DNA from: Botryllus schlosseri
Lineage: Eukaryota
Length of the DNA: 64,000 nt
Assembly (NCBI GenBank): GCA_051294905.1
Contig: CM119377.1
Span: 10,230,001-10,294,000, forward strand
Direction: 5' to 3'
The position numbers and the translations under genes are program-made. Every line of letters begins with the position of its first letter. Position 1 is the stretch's first letter. The notes beneath the pieces were generated by a model that saw only the letters and a program-made list of their open reading frames with translations, had not been told where the DNA came from and made no database searches. This document shows positions 661 through 64,000 of this stretch, piece by piece.

Positions 661-2277
661 TCAATCGGCACCTTCTCCCGGGGATCTCACGTCATCAATC
701 TTCAAAATCATACGCACAAGCTGTGTAGCTAGAGAGATCTGTTGCTTCTTGCCCATGAGCGTTTCAAGAACGTGCTGCTCTTTCATGTCGCAGGTGCCTT
801 TGTTCAAGCAGTCGATTCCGAGATTAGAATTTCCTTCGTTGACTTGCCTCGAACGGACTGCGGATAAGGTCTGAATCGGATTGAGGCCACTGTTTTCAGC
901 CAGAGCCAAGGGAACGGTTTCCAAGGCTTGAGCGTAAGAACGCATAGCATACTGCTCCAAAGTCGGATTTAATTCGGCCTCTTTTGAAACAGAGATAGCA
1001 CATGCAATTTCACATGCACCACCACCGTACACAACTCTGTTATCGCGGACCAAGTTACGAATAACACACAGAGCATCGTGGATAGAGCGTTTCGCCTCTT
1101 CGCATATCATTTTGTTACCTCCCCTCAAAAAGATGGTGACGGCCTTTGTGTTCTTGCATTTCTCGATAACAAGCATTCTATCTTTCGTCGTTCCAAAAGA
1201 GATTTCACGGACAATACCGGCGTAACCTAATTTTTCCGGTGTCAACTCCGAAAACCTTGGAACGATTCGGCCACCTGTTGCGATAGCGATAAGTTCGATT
1301 TCCGGTCCACCGACCCATCGTACCGCAGGTAACTCGTTTTGAAGAAGCAGGTGATTAGCTTCATCGTCAAATCCCCATTGGCAAATTGCTATGCTCGCGC
1401 CGGTGTCTTTCACTTGCTTTACCATTTCTGCAAACTTTTCTTTTTCGTAAGTCTGCAACTTTTTATAATCTTCAACTGATGTAACGTCGAGCTTATGCTT
1501 GGTTTTAGGCTTTGGCGGTTCAAAGGGACATGTCAAGATTGCGAGTTTCGCATCTTTGATCACTTTCGGCATTTGAGGATGGCTCATATCTTTATCGACA
1601 AGGACGCCCCTGATTAGCTGACTGTCCTCTAATTTACCACCGTTCTTCGATTCAACTTTGATTAATTCAAAGTCCACGTCTTTACGGTCGAAGTCCGCGA
1701 CAGCCATAACTGCATCGACTGCGATTTTTGCGAATTGCCTGTGACATTTATTGACGATTTTTGATCCAAGAGTCGTCATGGCTACTTCAACCAAATTTTC
1801 ACAGTCCTTGGGATCGACTTGGAAAACATCTGCAATTTCATCAAGTTTTTTCAAAGCAACATGCATGGCAGCTTCATAGCCATCAGCAACTCGTATAGGG
1901 TGGATTCCACGGTCGAGAAGTTGCTCCGCTTGTTCTAACAGAGCACCGGCCAACACCACAACGCCAGTGGTACCATCTCCAATCTCATCATCTTGAGATT
2001 TCGATAACTCCACCATCAACTTGGCAATCTGATGATTGACGTCCATCTTGTCGAGAATGGTAGCACCATCGTTAGTGACAGTAACATCTCCGTCAGGAGA
2101 TACCATCATTTTGTCCAACCCATTTGGGCCGAGAGACGTGCGAACGGTATTGGCGACTGTTTTGGCAGCTAAAATATGCGACTTCACTGCGTCGAGTCCT
2201 GTTAATCTGGACTTCCTTTCTTGATCTCGTACAATAATAAACGGCCTACCGTATTCGTCGAATGCCATAGACGCCAT
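661..2277 (-). CDS. CCT5: T-complex protein 1 subunit epsilon (CCT/TRiC chaperonin), single exon, 538 aa
   Basis: Uninterrupted ORF with perfect Kozak context (CCACCATGG). N-terminus [23 protein letters not shown] and [12 protein letters not shown]-binding motifs, and the CCT5-type [17 protein letters not shown] segment. Confidence 0.98.
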
Positions 2278-41405: not shown

Positions 41406-42203
41406 ATGTCCTTTTCGCGAGCATTATCGACATTCGTTAAAAATGCATCGGCGTCATTCGCCAAACAACAACGGTTTTCCAGCACTCTGTCTGTTGCAAA
41501 TGTGAGTCCTTTGTACATGTCCCCTATTTCGTCGCAACATAACAGAAGATGTACTACACTCCTGAAATCGACAAAATTTTCGCGGCAATGTGCAGCCGCG
41601 CTTCACACAGAAGGCGACAGGCGTTTCGTGGAACTTTTGGAGTCAGAAATACAGCAAGAGAAAGATAGATCATTATCTATGACATCGATGTCAGACGGTT
41701 GGCTGGCATCTTTCGATGGTGCTAGTGGTACCTTGAAGAAGTCTCATGATGGCGATAAAATAGAAGTACAGTTTTCACTTAACGGCTCAATTCCGCCGTT
41801 GCAAGAAGAAGATATTGAACATGGCGAGGAAGAGGAAGGAGCTCTGATGCCGTCTTACCCAGAGTTTACGGTGAAGGTTACAAAGCCCAACACCCGTCAA
41901 GCAATTGAACTGGAATGCTTCTTCCCGGAAGACGTACAAGACGGTATACAAGAAGACGAAGATACCAATTTATTCTCAATCCGAAGTGTTATTGTTTACG
42001 AAGGTGAAATTAGTGAAGGAACCTACATCATTGAAACGGACAATCTCGAACCAAAAGTGTACAGCTATTTATTGAGCTATCTGGCCGACCGCGGCGTTGA
42101 CAATCAGTTTGCGGAGGAATTTATCGAACTAACGACTGCTGCTGAGCAAAAAGAATATGTTGTCTCGTTACAAAAATTGAAAGACTTCATATCAAGCAAA
42201 TAG
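41406..42203 (+). CDS. C1QBP: Mitochondrial matrix protein p32/gC1qR (MAM33 family), single exon, 265 aa
   Basis: Basic Ser/Arg-rich presequence, then EGDRRFVELLESEI, an acidic core, and C-terminal LLSYLADRGVDNQFAEEFIELTTAAEQKEY...LKDFISSK, typical of C1QBP. Confidence 0.95.
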   Translation: MSFSRALSTFVKNASASFAKQQRFSSTLSVANVSPLYMSPISSQHNRRCTTLLKSTKFSRQCAAALHTEGDRRFVELLESEIQQEKDRSLSMTSMSDGWLASFDGASGTLKKSHDGDKIEVQFSLNGSIPPLQEEDIEHGEEEEGALMPSYPEFTVKVTKPNTRQAIELECFFPEDVQDGIQEDEDTNLFSIRSVIVYEGEISEGTYIIETDNLEPKVYSYLLSYLADRGVDNQFAEEFIELTTAAEQKEYVVSLQKLKDFISSK

Positions 42204-54998: not shown

Positions 54999-56591
54999 TC
55001 AGTCTGCCAAGACGAACGCAGGAAGCAGCGCTCCGTCTTCACCCAAAACGGCATCGAAATTTTGTAAAACATGCGCAAATTCCTGTGACGGCACGTCGCC
55101 TTTTTCACGCTTTACCATCCATTCGATTAAAGGTAGATAACAATCGCTCACACGCTTTACGAGTTCCTTTTCAACGATCAGACACTGGTGGGCCATCTTT
55201 TCTTCATAGAATTTCCTCACGGATCTAGCCGATTTGTAATAAATAGTTTCAACAGGTGACGGCGCATCGTCAAACAAGCCCTCGAGATCGCGACAGTTTG
55301 CACGAAGCGGAAGTTCATTTTGAAAACCTACACCAAGTTCGCTGTGGAACTTTACCGGCACAGCTTTTACTGTTTCAGTATATTTACGCTCAACGCTATT
55401 CAGTAATTCCTGCACCATATCCAGCATAACCGACTTATAATAATCAGAGATATGCCGCTTTTTCGACGGTAAACTTGACGATAGCTGCAATTCACTGTCC
55501 AGTAGGTTTATTGCTCTGGTGCAAATCCTCAAGCATTCGCTGGTCTCCCGCGTTAAGGCCTCCTTTGAGCGTGTGCGCGCGTAACTTGAGTCGCACCCCG
55601 ATTTTTTACATAGCCTCTCAAAAAACATAGTCTCTTCGGCGCAATATGAATCTTTCCAGGACAGGGAAAGTTGATCCCTAACCTCGGCGTAGGTGGACAA
55701 GAGCTTTTTTGTCCGCGGTGGCAGTTTGATGTGAGGTTTAACTTCGGTAAACTGTACCTTGACTTTGTCCGAGTCGAAAACAATCGTCTTACCGTCTCCA
55801 TTCTCTCGAGAATCCGGACTTGGAGGGCTATCTCCCGGAATATGCACACCGTTAGATTGGGGCTGATACGAGGATTCAGCCGGACCAATGTGGGGGGTAG
55901 TCGTCATAGCTTTCGTAGTACATGCCAGGTTATTGCGCGTGTGAGCTGCGGAAAGACTTTTAACACGCTTTGATTTATGCGTTGATTTCTCGATTCCTTT
56001 CGGAACCTTGGTATGCGCTGAATGTGATTTTGTGCAATTTGGTTTAGTAGTTCCCGAGACTTGGGCTGTCGGTACTAAACGTTTGGATTTGTTGTCTGCG
56101 ACTCTAGGTTGCGATTCCAGATATTGAATCGTTGACTTTTTCTTCCTAATCGGTTTGTCGTTGGTTTCATGCAAAAGCTTTGCCTTTCGCAGGACGTCGT
56201 TAATGCTATCCAATTCTTTGTCTAGTTTTGATAGGTTGTTCTGTCTCACTTCATCTTTTTGCTTCTGGAGAAAGGATTCTTGATATGACTTCTGAACTGC
56301 GTCTGGCGCTTGCGATAGGAGCCACGGTCTCTTGATTTCATCTGGAAAAATGAAACACAACTCATCACTTTATCCAGAGCAAGCCCAAGTCAAGAGCAGA
56401 ATGTTGTGCAGAGCATTTGCATGGCCATGCGAGATGTACAGAATTATCACAAACCACTAATACTGTAGGCTATACAACATATTTATAGTGATATTACTTA
56501 ACAGATGCAGGTGATGTTCGTTATCATGCAGCAGTTTCTCATATTCCCCAATCACAGAATCGATCCATTGCTGTACTGGCTCCAATTCCAT
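54999..56591 (-). CDS. TEDC2: Probable tubulin epsilon and delta complex protein 2 (C16orf59-like), 2 coding exons, about 478 aa
   Basis: Exons 56498-56591 (MELEPVQQWIDSVIGEYEKLLHDNEHHLHLL) and 54999-56341, joined by a phase-1 156-nt GT-AG intron. By-eye similarity to human TEDC2 blocks in the same order: KELDSINDVLRKA ~ KELEFLTQALEKA; IKLPPRTKKLLSTYAEVRDQL ~ LRLPAAFRKAASQNSSLWAQL; C-terminal LGEDGALLPAFVLAD ~ LCEGGARVLTILRDE. Orthology needs an HMM check. Confidence 0.6.
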
Positions 56592-57090
56592 GAATGTGTA
56601 GAAAATAATTCAATATACTATCTTCCTGCTGTATAAAAAAATATTGTTGCTGGTCGAGCGCATACAAGGACAAGAAGAGTGGTGGAAAAATGTCACAGTA
56701 ACCTAGACATAAAATGACTATGGATAGCAACAACCATCAATGTGGCACAATTCTGTCCAGGCGTAGTCTACACTTTTCGACAATCACACATGCAGAAAAA
56801 TCGGTATTTGAAATATAAGAAGTTCATCATCTTATCAGTCACATCGTGGAATCAGATATATCGATGATCTCACCAATTTACCTAGACATGGAGATTTTTT
56901 AAGGTACTTAATTGCACTCAAGCCATTAAAAACTAACATGCCTAGACTCATGATGATATCTGAGAATTATAACTTTTAAATACGTGATCTAGAAAACGAC
57001 TACCATCAAGTACTCGGCAGCTTTCTCAGAACCTAGAACAAGAAAATATTACAAAACAAACAATCGGAGTATGGCGCCAAGAATATGATA

Positions 57091-58095
57091 TTATCCTCTG
57101 TTCATTCTGTTACCATCTCCCCTACGATGAGTATCTTTAAAATCATCGAAAGCTCTTTGCTTCATCAATGCTTCCTCATCATCTTCATCTTCACTTTTCT
57201 CTTCATGACCAGCCCCGCCGTTAGCGCCTTGAACACCCTGGTCTGGCAATGACCCAGCCGCCGCATGGGAGTCGTACCACTCTTCCACAGTCATAGATGG
57301 TAAGCTTGGATATCCTGCTCCAAAAACTGATGACTGAGCTTTGTCACGTGTTAGAATGAAATTCTTAGGTTCTGAGGATTTATTCTGGTTTTGTGGAGGT
57401 TGCGGAGGGTTAGCTTTGTCAGGAAGACTGTTCCAGAACTGCAAAATCTCTTTTTCTTGTGCTATGGACTCCATGCTTTCAGCCGACTTGTATATCCATT
57501 TCTCAATCACGGAAAACCAATAACTTCGTACTGTCTCATCGTCGGTTGATTCCATGTCTTCATCATCGCTTCCGATGATTGTTTTCAAGTGAGCGAGTCT
57601 TTCTTGGAGCTCTTTCTCCCGTTTAAACTTTGCGATTTTTGCTTCTCTCTTGGCATTCAACGCAGTCAAATCTCGGCCGGTTGTTATTTTCGCGTGATCG
57701 CCCCCTTCCAAAACGCCCTCGATGTAATTATTTGCGCCGATGTCATAGTCTTTACACCTTTCCAAAAATTGTATTAGAAACCCTTCCGCGGACTGGAGCA
57801 TTTCTCTTCTGTGTTTGCGTTCTGTATGAATTAACAAAGTCAAGTCTGCGCAAATAGCTGGCGTGAGGAGGTATTTCAAATTAGAAGAAGTTATCTCGGA
57901 AGAATCTTCATTGGTGCTGAACAGCTTCAATTGATCGATCCGTTGAGTCACGATTTCAAGAAGTTTCAGAGTCGATTTGATTTGCGTTTGCACCGAATCT
58001 GACATTGTTGGTTCGGTACTCTGTTCAACCTTTGAATGAACGGTCAAGGCTTCAAAGAAGAGCTTCGACAATGGTTTTTGTTCCATCGTTTCCAT
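57091..58095 (-). CDS. IGBP1: Immunoglobulin-binding protein 1 / alpha4 / TAP42 (PP2A-family regulator), single exon, 334 aa
   Basis: LFSTNED..EITSSNLKYLL, REAKIAKFKREKEL, FILTRDKAQSSVFGAGYPSLPSMTVEEWY, DDFKDTHRRGDGNRMNRG match the TAP42 family. ATG is in strong context (ATCATGG). Confidence 0.97.
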   Translation of the reverse strand: METMEQKPLSKLFFEALTVHSKVEQSTEPTMSDSVQTQIKSTLKLLEIVTQRIDQLKLFSTNEDSSEITSSNLKYLLTPAICADLTLLIHTERKHRREMLQSAEGFLIQFLERCKDYDIGANNYIEGVLEGGDHAKITTGRDLTALNAKREAKIAKFKREKELQERLAHLKTIIGSDDEDMESTDDETVRSYWFSVIEKWIYKSAESMESIAQEKEILQFWNSLPDKANPPQPPQNQNKSSEPKNFILTRDKAQSSVFGAGYPSLPSMTVEEWYDSHAAAGSLPDQGVQGANGGAGHEEKSEDEDDEEALMKQRAFDDFKDTHRRGDGNRMNRG

Positions 58096-58104
58096 GATGA
58101 GGAA

Positions 58105-58659
58105 TCAGTATTCACACCAGTTGGATTTATCTGCGGGTGTAAGATCGCCGGTCAATAGCAATATAATGTCTGTAAACCACCAAACTCCAAGTCCACCAAG
58201 AGTCAAAAATTTTGCAACTCCAACACCAGTTTGACCCAAGCAGAACCTATCAACTCCTAGACACCCAAGAAATACCGAATACAATAATGTACTAATAAAG
58301 CAATAACCCGTGTACTTTAAGCAAGGTATACCGGACTTCTTAAAAGTGCGGTTTCCAGCACAGTCAATTGATTCGTCAAGTACGTGACAGTAAACCGTTG
58401 TAGTCTTCACTTCAGAATATTTTTGATAACCGAAATCTTCTGGCGCGCAGCCGATTCCTTCGTCGGCTTCGGAGCTGTTTATCGGTTTATGTAGTGAATC
58501 GCAGATGATGAATTCGTCGGGCAAGAGATTGCACTGAATAAGCGGCGACCATGGATCAATTTCTTGATTTTCCTGCTCCAGAGAATAAGACACTAAGACT
58601 GAGATTGCGAGAGAGAGTGCCGATATTACCACGCTCCAATACTGCATCGTAGACTGCAT
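58105..58659 (-). CDS. TM2D2: TM2 domain-containing protein 2, single exon, 184 aa
   Basis: Signal peptide, DPWSPLIQCNLLPDEFIIC, and TM2 domain TLLYSVFLGCLGVDRFCLG..KFLTLGGLGVWWFTDIILLLTG..NWCEY match TM2D2 specifically. First ATG is 58659; the ORF track start at 58662 is TTG. Confidence 0.95.
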   Translation of the reverse strand: MQSTMQYWSVVISALSLAISVLVSYSLEQENQEIDPWSPLIQCNLLPDEFIICDSLHKPINSSEADEGIGCAPEDFGYQKYSEVKTTTVYCHVLDESIDCAGNRTFKKSGIPCLKYTGYCFISTLLYSVFLGCLGVDRFCLGQTGVGVAKFLTLGGLGVWWFTDIILLLTGDLTPADKSNWCEY

Positions 58660-58690
58660 CAAAATAACAACGGGCGAAGTTGATTAGCAT
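58556..58690 (-). other. Out-of-frame uORF (44 aa) overlapping both TM2D2 start codons
   Basis: ATG at 58690 (weak context TCCATGC) and TGA at 58558-58556. A 21-aa ORF (58552-58487) follows 3 nt later in the same frame. Presence in the mRNA depends on the 5' end. Confidence 0.4.
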
Positions 58691-59075
58691 GGATTTGGAT
58701 TTGGATTAGATAAAACCGGATTTTATGATTTTGGCCGGAGCTGAAGAGGATTTAGCATACTGTGATTTTCAGGAAGAAACTAAATAGTTTTATACACAGA
58801 AAAGATTTTATTCATATTGAGGTGATTTGTATAATGATTCATTGACCATGGAAAACTAATTATCGGATAGATGCGAAATACGGGACTAGATTCTAGATTC
58901 TCTAGTCTCTTCGTTAATAGATGAAAATTCTTAGTAAATCTGAACTGAACTGAAGATATAGTCATCATAATCATATAGGTGGCGATCAATACCAGTGACG
59001 TAAGGTCAGGGAGGAAAAAAAAACAACGATGATGTGAGGCAGTCGTCAGGATGAGTAAAGGAAAATTGTGAAAAC

Positions 59076-59159
59076 CTTCCTGTCTTTTCATTGTATCGCA
59101 TTCTTGTGGTGTATTGAACTGATGAAAATTGCTAATAAACCAATGATGATGATGATGAT
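59076..59159 (+). mobile_element. Extreme 3' end (about 85 bp) of the same CR1-group LINE
   Basis: cttcctgtcttttcattgtatcgca...gctaataaaccaatgatgatgatgatga is the reverse complement of ~2605-2690. Confidence 0.85.
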
Positions 59160-59694: not shown

Positions 59695-60537
59695 TATGTA
59701 TCAGTTACACTGCGGTCGTTGCCCCGAATATTTCAATGCTGACTTTTTTACCTCTGAATTAAAAGCGCACGAGTAGGCCTACAAACACACCCGCGTCCAC
59801 GTCGTCCAAACATCAGTGTTGGGATGACTCGAGTCAACTTTTTGGTATGACTTGACTTGACTCGAGTCACTTTGGTAAATGACTTGACTTGACTTGACTC
59901 GGCGTATCAAAAATATGGATTGACTCGTGACTCGGAGCAAAATTCACGAGTCAATTTCAAGTCATCAAGCATTCGGTGACGATAAAAATCACTGTATCTT
60001 GCATGTTCGGATTGTTCGTCAAACGCTGGCGTAACTCGTGAGAGCGACCAATCATTCAATGATCGTGTGTTTTACTGAGCCTACATTATTCTCCAACAAA
60101 TATATTGACCACAAACGAAGCGATCGAAGCTTAATTACAGCTTACGTTGTCGTAAACTAGTAGTCAAGTAGTTTAATACCAAAATATCTCTTGCTGTTCT
60201 CTGTTCTTACCTTAACCGAACCTTTTATTTTATTTTGAAATTAAAATCGAATAGAGTTTATATATTCCTCAACCATTGGCGCAGACACGAATTGTATCAT
60301 ATCAATATGTATAAATGGGTAATTTGCATCTTATCAATTCGTTTCTTTATTATTTATTTTGGCTGGTAACTATTAACTGAAGCTATGCAATTACTTACGC
60401 AGTTTAGCAGTTCTACGCATATGTAAGCGATACAGCCCCTTGTGACTCGAAGGTAGTGACTTGATCCCAACACTGCCAAACATCATATATGATCGACCGA
60501 AAAGATCATCACTCCATCAATTATGCCTGATGTGTGG
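59695..60537 (+). mobile_element. Internal fragment of the same LINE, split by a hAT MITE
   Basis: 59695-59813 and 60476-60537 are contiguous pieces of the LINE (reverse complement of ~2965-3130). Confidence 0.85.
59814..60475. mobile_element. hAT-type MITE (662 bp) with GACTTGACTCGAGTC subterminal repeats
   Basis: TIR CAGTGTTGGGAT / ATCCCAACACTG. Perfect TSD ccaaacat (59806-59813, 60476-60483). Confidence 0.9.
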
Positions 60538-60540
60538 TAT

Positions 60541-61330
60541 TTCGCAAGCTCTTTCCGATGATGTGTCCATTGTCGGAATTGTAAGTCAGGCACAATCTCA
60601 AAAACCCGCCCGGAATTTGGCATTTGCCGTTCATTGAAATTGATGCCGACGCAATGCCCGGCAGCGCAATGTAATGCATCTTTGGCACTCGAATTTGTAC
60701 TTAACCAGGACGAAGTTGAAAATGAAAATGGATTTTTATTCAAGTACTTTGCAAGCTCTTTCCGATGATGTGTCCATTGTCGGAATTGTATATGTCAGGT
60801 ACAATCTTAAAAACCCGCCTGAATTTTGGCATTTGCCGTTCATTGAAATTGATGCCGACGCAATGCCCGGCAGCGCAATGTAATGCATCTTTGGCACTCG
60901 AATTTGTACTTAACCAGGACGATGTTGAAAATGAAAATGGATTTTTATTAAAGTACTTTGCAAGCTCTTTCCGGTGATGTGTCCATTGTAGGAATTGTAA
61001 GTCAGGTACAATCTCAAAAACCCGCCCGGAATTTGGCATTTGCCGTACATTGAAATTGATGCCGAGGCAATGTCCGATAGCGCAATGTAATGCATCATTG
61101 ATACTCGTATTTGTAATGAACCAGGACGAAGTTGAAAATGAAAATGGAATTTTATTTAAGTACTTTGCAAGCTCTTTCCGATGATGTGTCCATTGTCGGA
61201 ATTGTATGTCAGGTACACTCTCAAATCCAGCCTGAAAATAGACATTTGCTGTACATCGGCAGTTCGGTACTTAAGCAAATTGCCGAGAGCGAAATGCTAA
61301 TCGTATTTAAAATTAAGCAGGACGAAATGC
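60541..61330. repeat. About 207-bp tandem repeat, 3 full plus 1 partial/diverged copy
   Basis: gcaagctc anchors at 60544, 60751, 60960 and 61167 (periods 207, 209, 207). Confidence 0.9.
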
Positions 61331-61524: not shown

Positions 61525-64000
61525 TGGTTTGAAATAAGGACAGATTTGTTTGAAATGAGGAGAGTCTCATGTTTGAAATGAGGATAGTCATGTCAGAAAT
61601 AAGGATAGTTATGTTTGAAATAAGGATAGTCGCTATATTCACTATAAAGTCAGTTGCAGTACCAGGCACGACTTCCCAGTGGTAACCCAGTCCGAACACA
61701 TCCCAGACATGATGTCCAAACACGCCCCAGACACGATGTCCGAATGGCAGCACAGACCGAACACACCCCAGACATGATGTTCAAACACGCGCCAGACACG
61801 ATGTATGAGTGTCAATACAGGCCTAACACGCCCAAGACACCATGTCTGAATGGCAACACAGACCGAACACGCCCCAGACACGATGTCCTAGTGTCAACTC
61901 AGATCCGAAAACAACCCAGACACCATGTTTGAATGGCCGAACATGCCCCAGACAAGATGTCCGATTGGCATCACAGGCCGAACACACCCCAGACATGATG
62001 TCCAAACACGCCCCAGACACGATGTCCGGGTATCAACACAGGCCGAAAACGCCCAAGACACCATGTCCGAATGGCAACACAGGTCGAACACACCCCAGAC
62101 ATGATGTCCAAACACGCCCAAGACACCATGTCCGAATGGCAGCACAGGCCGAACACACCCCAGACATGATGTCCAAACACGCCCCAGACACGATGTCCGA
62201 TTGGCAGCACAGGCCGAACACACCCCAGACATGATGTCCAAACACGCCCCAGACACGATGTCCGATTGGCAGGACAGGCCGAACACACCCCTGACATGAT
62301 GTCCAAACACGCGCCAGACACGATGTCCGAGTGTCAATACAGGCCTAACACGCCCAAGACACCATGTGTGAATGGCAACACAGACCGGGCACGCCCCAGA
62401 CACAATGTCCGAGTGTCAACTCAGACCGAACACAACCCAGATACCACGTTTGAATGGCCGAACACGGCCCAGACACGATGTCCGATTGGCAGCACAGGCC
62501 GAACACACCCCAGACATGATATCCAAACACGCCCCAGACACGATGTCCGATTGGCAGCACAGGCCGAACACACCCCAGACATGATATCCAAACACGCCCC
62601 AGACACGATGTCCGATTGGCAGCACAGGCCGAACACACCCCTGACATGATGTCCAAACACGCGCCAGACACGATGTCCGAGTGTCAAAACAGGCCTAACA
62701 CGCCCAAGACACCATGTGTGAATGGCAACACAGACCGGGCACGCCCCAGACACAATGTCCGAGTGTCAACTCAGACCGAACACAACCCAGATACCATGTT
62801 TGAATGGCCGAACACGGCCCAGACACGATGTCCGATCGGCAGCACAGGCCGAACACACCCCAGACATGATGTCCAAACACGCCCCAGACACGATGTCCGA
62901 TTGGCAGCACAGGCCGAACACACCCCTGACATGATGTCCAAACACGCGCCAGACACGATGTCCGAATGGCAACACAGACCGAACACGCCCCAGACATGAT
63001 GTCCGAGCTTGCCGCAGACACGATGTCCGAGTGTCAACACAGGCCGACACGCCCCAGACATAATTTCTGAATGGCAGCACATGCCGAACACCACCCTGAC
63101 ATGATGTCGGAACACGCCCCAGAAACGATGTGCGATTGGCAACACAGTCCCAACACCCCCCCCCCCCCCCCCCCCCAGACACGATGTTAATAAGGTTGGT
63201 CATGTTTGAAATAAGGTCACTGGTCAGTCTCGTGTTTGAAATAAGGATAGTCATGTTAGAAATGAGGATAGTCATGTTTGATATAAGCTGGATAGTCATG
63301 TTTGAAATAAGGTTAGTCTCATGTTTGAAATGAGGATAGTCATGCTAGAAATAAGGATAGTCATGTTTGAAATAAGGATAGTCGCTATATTCACTATAAA
63401 GTCAGTTGCAGTACCAGGCACGACTTCCCAGTGGTAACCCAGTCCGAACATATCCCAGACATGATGTCCGAACACGCCCCAGACACGATGTCCTAGCGTC
63501 AACACAGTCCTAACATACCCCAGACATGATGTCCGAACACGCCCCAGACACGATGTCCGATTGGCAGCACAGGCCGAACACACCCCAGACATGATGTTCA
63601 AACACGCGCCAGACATCATGTCTGGGGTGTGTTCGGCCTGTGCTGCCAATCGGACATCATGTCTGGGGCATGTTCGGCCATTCAAACATGGTGTCTGGGT
63701 TGTGTTCGGATCTTAGTTGACACTCCGACATCGTGTCTGGGGCGTGTTCGGTCTGTGTTGCCATTCAGACATGGTGTCTTGGGCGTGTTAGGCCTGTGTT
63801 GACACTCGGACATCGTGTCTGGAGCGTGTTCGGACATCATGTCCGGGGTGTGTTCGGCCTGTGTTGCCAATCAGACATCGTGTCTGGGGCGTGTTCGGTC
63901 TGTGTTGTCATTCGGACATGGTGTCTTGGGCGTGTTCGGCCTGTGTTGATACTCAGTCGTCGTGTCTGGCGCGTGTTCGGATATCATGTCTGGGTCGAGA
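61525..64000. repeat. Hierarchical satellite built on a GACAT-G-ATGTC palindromic core, duplicated as a ~1.75-kb macro-unit and inverted at 63617
   Basis: Block A (~21-bp gtttgaaataaggatagtcat repeats) plus a unique spacer (61631 and 63383) plus block B (24+41 = 65-bp dimers, 350-bp higher-order duplication). C21 run at 63156-63176. Orientation flips at CCAGACAT-C-ATGTCTGG. Confidence 0.95.

What the first reader, a model, noticed from the sequence alone, without database searches (positions are those of the whole stretch)
58084..58690. TM2D2-IGBP1: two full-length housekeeping ORFs 9 nt apart, with an ATG desert and a uORF relay (candidate bicistronic mRNA)
Seen in sequence: TM2D2 TGA (58107-58105), then TTCCTCATC, then the IGBP1 ATG (58095). 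There is no AG in the gap and no room for a poly(A) site or promoter. In the 540 nt after the second TM2D2 Met (58644-58105) I count only one ATG in any minus-strand frame (58552); composition (~43% GC) predicts very roughly 8-10. C1QBP and IGBP1 show no such depletion. TM2D2 starts are weak or moderate (TTGATGC, ACGATGC), while both IGBP1 starts are strong (ATCATGG, ACGATGG). An upstream ATG (58690) opens a 44-aa out-of-frame uORF that bypasses both TM2D2 starts and stops at 58556. The lone internal ATG follows 3 nt later, gives 21 aa and stops at 58487, leaving 391 nt free of ATG up to IGBP1. Established: leaky scanning and reinitiation after short uORFs drive known bicistronic and ATF4-type mRNAs, and the IGBP1 N-terminal helix is conserved, so translation should start at M1/M4. 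Inference: one mRNA partitions ribosomes between TM2D2 and the essential PP2A regulator alpha4, possibly in a stress-tunable way.
Basis: partly seen in the sequence, partly recalled or inferred. Interest (0 to 1): 0.85.

Follow-up and report, generated by a model that had tools for sequence, protein, structure and literature searches.

The report
Two-gene mRNA in a sea squirt
In this sea squirt the membrane protein gene TM2D2 and the only copy of the phosphatase regulator IGBP1 appear to sit on one messenger RNA, and TM2D2 has been kept almost free of ATG triplets in at least seven related species, the signature expected if ribosomes must slide through it to reach IGBP1.

Summary
On the minus strand an intronless TM2D2 ORF (58659/58647-58105) is followed after 9 nt by an intronless IGBP1/TAP42 ORF (58095-57091). 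Only one ATG (58552) lies in the 549 nt between them.

In this species alone the depletion is modest (1 out-of-frame ATG against 4.6 expected, P=0.017). It recurs in six orthologous loci with near-saturated synonymous sites: 7 against about 40 expected, and combined P about 1e-9 over five lineages. IGBP1 in the same loci shows none.

RNA reads from four runs show:
- continuous, roughly equal coverage from about 58665 to about 56645;
- template-switch-tagged 5' ends at 58665;
- one dominant 3'-tag pile-up after IGBP1;
- no listed spliced-leader or poly(A) signal at the junction.

IGBP1 is single-copy in the genome.

Best reading: a capped, non-trans-spliced bicistronic mRNA whose second cistron is reached by leaky scanning. 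A 6-18 nt leader would help. This mechanism is inferred from sequence and was not measured.

ATG 58690 lies in a stretch with no RNA coverage, and the 58552 mini-ORF is not conserved.

This is a new member of a known kind (Drosophila stoned/Snapin, green-algal bicistrons), in a lineage where tight gene pairs are normally read as trans-splice-resolved operons. Other first-reader notes list further tight pairs in this genome; I did not test them.

The parts
58665..58665 (-). Mapped mRNA 5' end (probable transcription start). No AG precedes it, so it is not a trans-splice acceptor.
   Evidence: four X23 reads carry the reverse complement of the SMART template-switch oligo directly against 58665. 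Depth is zero at 58675-59022 in all four runs. Contigs of X2 and X7 end at 58657/58658. One search gives the sequence gttgtt|ATTTTGATG.
58660..58665 (-). Six-nt 5' leader before the first AUG. The conserved AUG at 58647 lies 18 nt from the 5' end.
   Evidence: The first 106 nt fold no better than shuffles (z +1.55).
58105..58659 (-). First cistron: intronless TM2D2 (TM2 domain). In-frame starts at 58659 and 58647; the latter aligns with the orthologues' start. Almost free of ATG.
   Evidence: Pfam TM2, E 4e-14. Orthologues 54-83% identical. ATG statistics.
58487..58552 (-). The only internal ATG (out of frame), with its 21-codon ORF. Not conserved in position.
58096..58104 (-). Nine-nt spacer TTCCTCATC between the TM2D2 stop and the IGBP1 start. 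It has no AG and no ATG.
   Evidence: Reads and contigs bridge it, and no joints or loose ends are listed there.
57091..58095 (-). Second cistron: intronless IGBP1/alpha4 (TAP42 family), the only copy in the genome. Its ATG density is normal.
   Evidence: Pfam TAP42, E 2e-77. Single genomic match. 14 out-of-frame ATGs against 12.2 expected.
56645..57090 (-). IGBP1 3' UTR, ending at the main poly(A) site at about 56645-56674.
   Evidence: the X21 3'-tag pile-up reaches depth 50-89 at 56674-56934 and drops to 0.95 in the bin below. X2 contig 1 runs from 58070 to 56645.
58556..58690 (-). It is present in the DNA, but its start lies outside the transcript seen.
   Evidence: ORF; zero depth at 58675-58761 in four runs.

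Best explanation
The locus makes one capped, polyadenylated mRNA of about 2.0 kb that is not trans-spliced (58665 to about 56645, minus strand). It carries TM2D2, a 9-nt spacer and IGBP1.

Some 40S subunits start at the cap-proximal TM2D2 AUGs, at +7 and +19 from the 5' end. Neither AUG has G at +4. Subunits that miss them scan about 550 nt that selection has kept nearly free of AUG, and start at the IGBP1 AUG (A at -3, G at +4).

Shown here: the ORFs, their single-copy status, the transcript ends and continuity at short-read resolution, and lineage-wide ATG avoidance restricted to TM2D2.

Inferred: that both ORFs lie on the same molecules, that scanning (not reinitiation or an internal entry site) delivers ribosomes to IGBP1, and that the very short leader causes the leakiness. 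The last point rests on the established finding that AUGs within about 12 nt of the cap are poorly recognised (my own knowledge, Kozak 1991).
For: 1. Transcript.
- Depth is continuous from 56645 to about 58665 in bulk RNA (X23) and in two contig runs (X2, X7). It is zero at 58675-59022 in all four runs.
- Four reads carrying the template-switch oligo abut 58665.
- The 3'-tag library X21 piles up at 56674-56934 (depth 50-89), against at most 6.8 near the TM2D2 end.
- Mean bulk depth is about 9.8 over TM2D2 and about 7.7 over IGBP1. X2 word depth is about 44-64 over most of TM2D2, falling to 21-36 in its two 5'-most bins, and 54 over IGBP1.
- X7 record 12 (860 nt) and X2 records 2 and 3 bridge the junction.
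- No joints, starts, ends or loose ends are listed at 58096-58140.

2. No AG lies in the spacer. The nearest AG is 35 nt upstream, inside the TM2D2 coding sequence.

3. ATG avoidance is conserved.
- Seven intronless orthologous loci have 0-3 out-of-frame ATGs against 4.6-6.7 expected. Per-species P runs from 0.035 to 2.5e-5. Fisher's combined P over five lineages is 1.2e-9.
- At codon junctions that could form ATG, the ATG-forming codon is used 7/90 times, against 437/1004 elsewhere (P 9e-13). In IGBP1 of the same loci it is 71/114 against 594/1428.
- Synonymous sites are near saturation between most lineages.

4. Tunicate TM2D2 proteins have no internal Met. The one exception is a Met at residue 171 of P0003, beside that species' overlapping IGBP1 start. 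The named non-tunicate TM2D2 proteins have 1-7.

5. In L004 the IGBP1 ORF starts 26 nt before the TM2D2 stop, in another frame. That fits scanning and does not fit termination-reinitiation.

6. IGBP1 is single-copy, so this cistron must supply the protein.

7. There is no Rfam hit and no unusual structure at the junction.

8. Precedent: AUG-depleted first cistrons and leaky scanning are described in green algae and in Drosophila stoned/Snapin (PMC11892635).
Against: - There are no long reads, so one molecule carrying both ORFs is inferred from short reads and contigs.
- Bulk depth is only about 5-15, and ten loose-end rows were not shown. A minor trans-spliced or internally started IGBP1 mRNA cannot be excluded.
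- The 5' end rests on four reads.
- The shuffle test is imperfectly calibrated. An unrelated TM2 paralogue (4 against 8.6, P 0.004) and a ZDHHC/ankyrin ORF (5 against 13, P 0.002) also score low.
- The weak-then-strong Kozak contrast is not conserved.
- Clavelina, where TM2D2 has introns and the gap holds an AG, shows no significant depletion (2 against 2.85).
- There is no translation data of any kind.
Confidence: 0.62

Rival explanations
1. Shifted transcription start. The promoter fires over a small range. Transcripts starting at or just after the TM2D2 AUGs (58659/58647) lack a TM2D2 start, so they act as monocistronic IGBP1 mRNAs with the TM2D2 body as an ATG-free 5' UTR of about 550 nt. 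Start-site choice, not leaky scanning, would then divide output between the two proteins.
For: The TM2D2 AUGs lie only 6 and 18 nt from the mapped 5' end, and contigs end at 58657/58658. This model predicts the same conserved ATG desert and the same coverage.
Against: The only tagged 5' ends listed are at 58665, upstream of both AUGs. No excess of starts is listed further in. Four reads cannot define a start-site distribution.
Confidence: 0.15
2. Ciona-type operon. A dicistronic precursor is resolved by spliced-leader trans-splicing, here at the AG at 58132-58131 inside TM2D2, or elsewhere. IGBP1 would be translated from its own SL-capped mRNA, and the bridging reads would be precursor.
For: Ciona operons abut genes with no intercistronic DNA, and their first genes are often single-exon (PMC1488885, PMC2760879). 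Several orthologous loci have an AG at or after the stop codon (L002, L005, L007, L008, L011). A small 3'-tag peak (depth 6.8) lies at 58153-58239.
Against: There is no AG in the spacer, and in Styela none within 100 nt of the ATG. An acceptor inside TM2D2 would destroy the TM2D2 mRNA. No loose ends are listed at the junction. The 3'-tag signal at the TM2D2 end is under 10% of the main site and lies upstream of an A-rich run. TM2D2 and IGBP1 depths are equal. Trans-splice resolution gives no reason for an ATG desert in TM2D2.
Confidence: 0.1
3. Termination-reinitiation. Ribosomes that finish TM2D2 stay on the mRNA and restart at the nearby IGBP1 AUG.
For: Stop-to-start distances are very short in all ten loci (4-37 nt). 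A reinitiation mechanism after long ORFs has been reported in yeast (PMC11952965, listed; not read).
Against: It does not explain ATG avoidance along the whole first cistron. In L004 the start lies 26 nt upstream of the stop. No structured element is evident. Reinitiation after a 180-codon ORF is normally inefficient (my own knowledge).
Confidence: 0.07
4. A uORF from 58690 carries ribosomes past the TM2D2 starts, and the 58552 mini-ORF then passes them on to IGBP1 by ATF4-like reinitiation.
For: Both ORFs exist in the DNA. Some orthologous contigs have tiny uORFs beside the TM2D2 AUG (L004, L005, L007), but whether these are transcribed is unknown.
Against: 58690 lies in a stretch with zero RNA depth and upstream of the tagged 5' end. 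The 58552 ATG is not conserved, and L001 and L007 have no internal ATG.
Confidence: 0.03

Closest known systems
Drosophila dicistronic genes stoned and Snapin, as described in PMC11892635
   Same: Two unrelated full-length proteins are encoded on one mRNA. The first cistron is deficient in internal AUGs. The second is reached by leaky scanning.
   Different: Here the first start lies only 6-18 nt from the 5' end, the spacer is 9 nt, and the lineage otherwise resolves tight gene pairs by trans-splicing. There is no mutational proof here.
Green-algal bicistronic loci (PMC11892635)
   Same: Pairs conserved over long evolutionary times, AUG depletion before ORF 2, and short inter-ORF spacers (median 40-183 nt).
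   Different: The algal ORF 1 is typically short (median about 290 nt in one species), whereas TM2D2 is 540-555 nt. The algal cases have Iso-Seq and in vivo mutagenesis support. This one has short reads and comparative statistics only.
Ciona intestinalis operons without intercistronic DNA (PMC1488885, PMC2760879)
   Same: Same-strand abutting genes, a single-exon first gene, and an ascidian host. The TM2D2-IGBP1 adjacency is also present in Clavelina.
   Different: Ciona operons are defined by an SL-trans-spliced downstream mRNA and a poly(A) site at the boundary. Neither was seen here, and the spacer has no AG.
ATF4/GCN4-type uORF control
   Same: Downstream initiation depends on what ribosomes do at upstream start codons.
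   Different: The upstream ORF here is a conserved 180-codon protein gene, not a regulatory uORF. The proposed uORF is not in the transcript.

Membership tests
Leaky-scanning bicistronic mRNA | Both ORFs lie on one mature mRNA | tested here: met
   one tagged 5' end (58665), one dominant 3'-tag site (about 56650), equal depth, and contigs and reads bridging the spacer. This is short-read resolution only; single-molecule proof is lacking.
Leaky-scanning bicistronic mRNA | AUG depletion in every frame upstream of ORF 2 | tested here: met
   One ATG in 549 nt. Conserved in seven loci, combined P about 1e-9. IGBP1 controls are not depleted.
Leaky-scanning bicistronic mRNA | Inefficient ORF 1 start (poor context or cap-proximal) | tested here: inconclusive
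   In the window, the leader is 6 and 18 nt and neither start has G at +4. In orthologues position -3 is a purine in 5 of 7, and leader lengths are unknown.
Leaky-scanning bicistronic mRNA | ORF 2 output falls when AUGs are added upstream or the ORF 1 start is strengthened | not testable with these tools
   Needs reporter assays or ribosome profiling.
Ciona-type SL-resolved operon | Same-strand genes less than 100 nt apart | tested here: met
   Nine-nt gap. Gaps are 4-37 nt, or the ORFs overlap, in nine other loci.
Ciona-type SL-resolved operon | The downstream mRNA begins with the spliced leader at an AG acceptor | tested here: not met
   No AG in the spacer. No loose ends are listed at 58096-58140 in four runs. 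Depth was limited, and ten rows were not shown.
Ciona-type SL-resolved operon | The upstream mRNA is polyadenylated at the gene boundary | tested here: not met
   X21 3'-tag depth is at most 6.8 near the TM2D2 end, against 50-89 after IGBP1.
ATF4-type uORF relay | The regulatory uORF lies within the mRNA leader and is conserved | tested here: not met
   58690 lies outside the transcript. The internal mini-ORF is not conserved.
IRES-driven second cistron | A structured or known element upstream of ORF 2 | tested here: inconclusive
   No Rfam match. The junction folds like shuffles (z -0.51). Absence of predicted structure does not exclude an IRES.

The most novel reading that the evidence does not exclude
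Ascidian 'operons' include a hidden class that is never resolved by trans-splicing. These would be true polycistronic mRNAs translated by cap-proximal leaky scanning. TM2D2-IGBP1 would be an ancient example, since the adjacency is shared by stolidobranchs and Clavelina. It may have evolved from an SL-resolved operon, and the 5'-leader length may set the ratio of the two proteins. Other tight pairs noted in this genome (COA4-SANBR, SMIM13-EXOSC3, HGH1-NAA20) could belong to the same class.
Probability: 0.3. Interest if true: 0.8.

Novelty: new member of a known kind. Interest (0 to 1): 0.64.

Why it matters
IGBP1/alpha4 is a conserved regulator of PP2A-family phosphatases. Here its only gene copy sits behind a 180-codon ORF on what appears to be a single mRNA. 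If confirmed, this would be a chordate case in which a conserved, single-copy gene is expressed as a second cistron by scanning, conserved across many ascidian species.

It would also mean that closely abutting gene pairs in tunicates cannot automatically be annotated as trans-splice-resolved operons.

The ATG-desert test used here needs only genome sequences from a few related species. It gives a cheap way to sort such pairs into the two classes.

Tried and rejected
- uORF relay from 58690: rejected on RNA coverage.
- Stop-codon readthrough fusion: the 9-nt gap is in frame here, but the gap is out of frame in 8 of the 10 loci (in frame only in the window and L009). Rejected.
- Conserved internal trans-splice acceptor: the AG at 58132-58131 comes from Pro-Ala-Asp codons and is absent in Styela, L001 and L007. 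Not conserved.
- Retrocopy with a second, intron-bearing IGBP1 elsewhere: rejected, single genomic match.
- PacBio RNA runs: none was listed.
- Spliced-leader-like words at the ends of the orthologous contigs: none relevant, and whether those Logan contigs are RNA or DNA is unknown.
- Two adjacent low-ATG ORFs in L035 looked like a second bicistron. They are exons of one SH2/SOCS-like gene.
- Mayfly TM2D2 as an outside control: 4 internal ATGs, 1 out-of-frame against 3.3 expected (P 0.07), so weakly informative. A nematode look-up found no record.
- Testing other candidate pairs noted in this genome (HGH1-NAA20, COA4-SANBR, SMIM13-EXOSC3): the loci were found but are multi-exon or ran off the fetched stretch. 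Abandoned.
- Rfam and folding of the junction and leader: nothing.

Full report
**What is there.** On the minus strand a 184/180-codon ORF (58659 or 58647 to 58105) carries a TM2 domain (Pfam E 4e-14). Nine bases later comes a 334-codon ORF (58095-57091) that matches TAP42 end to end (E 2e-77).
- Both ORFs are uninterrupted.
- The spacer is TTCCTCATC.
- Between ATG 58647 and ATG 58095 the only ATG in any frame is 58552. It opens 21 codons and leaves 391 ATG-free bases.
- Base composition alone predicts 10 ATGs there.

**Is the ATG gap more than chance?** Shuffling synonymous codons within the gene keeps the protein and the codon usage. It gives 4.56 out-of-frame ATGs against 1 observed, P=0.017. 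IGBP1, a CCT subunit, C1QBP and the neighbouring 453-codon ORF show no deficit.

Taken alone this is modest.
- In 264 kb of this genome TM2D2 has the lowest ATG density of 16 ORFs of at least 150 codons, but two exons of an SH2/SOCS-like gene come close.
- Two unrelated genes reach P of 0.002-0.004 in the same test.
- The single-species statistic therefore should not be over-read.

**Orthologues settle it.** The closest TM2D2 proteins (54-83% identical) come from Logan assemblies and from Styela clava.

In every locus recovered, a TAP42 gene follows TM2D2 directly.

| Locus | Gap |
|---|---|
| L001 | 16 nt |
| L002 | 13 nt |
| L003 (Styela) | 5 nt |
| L005 | 4 nt |
| L007 | 37 nt |
| L004 | the IGBP1 ORF starts 26 nt before the TM2D2 stop, in another frame |

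The adjacency also exists in Clavelina lepadiformis (gap 16 nt) and in two unnamed assemblies. In these three loci TM2D2 has introns.

In the seven intronless loci the counts of out-of-frame ATGs in TM2D2 are:

| Locus | Observed | Expected | P |
|---|---|---|---|
| Window | 1 | 4.56 | 0.017 |
| L001 | 0 | 6.04 | 1.2e-4 |
| L002 | 1 | 6.52 | 4.2e-4 |
| L004 | 3 | 5.99 | 0.035 |
| L003 | 1 | 5.85 | 1.4e-3 |
| L005 | 1 | 6.71 | 2.5e-5 |
| L007 | 0 | 4.73 | 1.3e-3 |

- Fisher's method over five lineages gives 1.2e-9.
- At codon junctions where a synonymous choice could create ATG, the ATG-forming codon is used 7 times in 90. The same codon classes are used 437 times in 1004 elsewhere in the gene (P 9e-13). 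In IGBP1 of the same loci the figures are 71/114 against 594/1428.
- Identical codons at conserved degenerate residues run at 0.27-0.49 for most pairs. Synonymous sites have therefore largely turned over, and the avoidance has been maintained independently.
- The tunicate proteins have no internal Met. The one exception lies beside the overlapping IGBP1 start in L004. The named non-tunicate TM2D2 proteins have 1-7.
- Clavelina is not significantly depleted (2 against 2.85).

**What the RNA shows.** Four runs from four studies were laid on 56500-59100.
- Depth is continuous from about 56645 to about 58665 and zero at 58675-59022 in all four.
- In the bulk library (X23), four reads carry the reverse complement of the SMART template-switch oligo directly against 58665. 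This marks a cDNA 5' end six bases before the first AUG. No AG precedes it, so it is not a trans-splice site.
- Contigs of X2 and X7 end at 58657/58658.
- The single-cell 3'-tag library (X21) piles up at 56674-56934 (depth 50-89) and falls to 0.95 below that. This places the main poly(A) site about 440 nt after the IGBP1 stop.
- Near the TM2D2 end the 3'-tag depth is at most 6.8, upstream of an A-rich run. That is compatible with internal priming.
- Bulk depth is about the same over both ORFs. An 860-nt contig and two allelic contigs bridge the spacer.
- No joints, clustered ends or loose ends are listed at the junction.
- IGBP1 has a single match in the 495-Mb assembly.

**Interpretation.** The simplest account is one non-trans-spliced bicistronic mRNA.
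- Ribosomes that miss the cap-proximal TM2D2 AUGs scan an AUG-free tract to IGBP1.
- The overlap in L004, the lack of any Rfam match or unusual structure at the junction, and the restriction of ATG avoidance to the first cistron favour scanning over reinitiation or an internal entry site.
- A close variant is a slightly dispersed transcription start that sometimes omits the TM2D2 AUGs. It predicts the same data and cannot be excluded.
- A Ciona-type operon resolved by trans-splicing is the textbook expectation for abutting ascidian genes (PMC1488885, PMC2760879). Its two defining features were looked for and not seen. It would also leave the ATG desert unexplained.
- At the available depth a minor trans-spliced form cannot be ruled out.

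**The relay idea.** ATG 58690 lies outside the transcript. The 58552 mini-ORF is not conserved in position and is absent in L001 and L007.

**Comparison and novelty.**
- AUG-depleted first cistrons with leaky scanning are documented for Drosophila stoned/Snapin and for conserved green-algal bicistrons (PMC11892635).
- I found no paper linking TM2D2 and IGBP1. The ascidian and tunicate searches I ran listed none describing a bicistronic mRNA translated by leaky scanning.
- I file this as a new member of a known kind. It is notable for its host lineage, for the 6-18 nt leader, and for carrying the sole IGBP1 copy.

**Limits.**
- No long reads and no translation data.
- The 5' end rests on four reads.
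- The species of the Logan and ENA loci are unnamed.
- The shuffle null is imperfectly calibrated.

Noticed in passing
window 54999-56591 (-): A third gene starts with ATG 56591, about 55 nt after the IGBP1 poly(A) site, and includes a 453-codon ORF with no Pfam hit. A gene of similar size follows IGBP1 in L005 and in Styela (L003). Four X23 reads at 56547 run on into unrelated sequence on the mRNA's 5' side, which could be another exon or a divergent allele.
   Followed up: no
window 59042-59079: A stretch of about 38 nt shows high RNA-contig depth (121 in X2), with loose ends on both sides in all runs. It looks like a short repeat shared by many transcripts or loci.
   Followed up: no
window 661-2277 (-) and 41406-42203 (+): A full-length CCT/TCP-1 chaperonin subunit (538 codons) and a C1QBP/MAM33 protein (265 codons) are also single uninterrupted ORFs. 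Intronless housekeeping genes seem frequent in this stretch.
   Followed up: partly
window 60480-61100: Overlapping ORFs on both strands repeat nearly the same peptides two or three times, suggesting a tandem repeat of roughly 250 nt.
   Followed up: no
window 62000-64000: G+C jumps to 54%, with stacked ORFs on both strands. The two I scanned had no Pfam hit.
   Followed up: partly
L015:1375-1917 and L024:8081-9685: A TM2 paralogue (4 out-of-frame ATGs against 8.6 expected, P 0.004) and a ZDHHC/ankyrin ORF (5 against 13, P 0.002) also show fewer out-of-frame ATGs than the synonymous shuffle predicts. The test needs a genome-wide null.
   Followed up: partly
L004:1-41, L005:4450-4464, L007:1-54: Tiny uORFs of 2-5 codons end at, or overlap, the TM2D2 start codon in three orthologous loci. 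If transcribed, they could push ribosomes past the TM2D2 AUG by delayed reinitiation.
   Followed up: no
L008:4985-5000: In Clavelina the 16-nt gap holds a good acceptor-like ttgcag 2 nt before the IGBP1 ATG, TM2D2 has three introns, and ATG depletion is not significant. The pair may be trans-splice-resolved there.
   Followed up: partly
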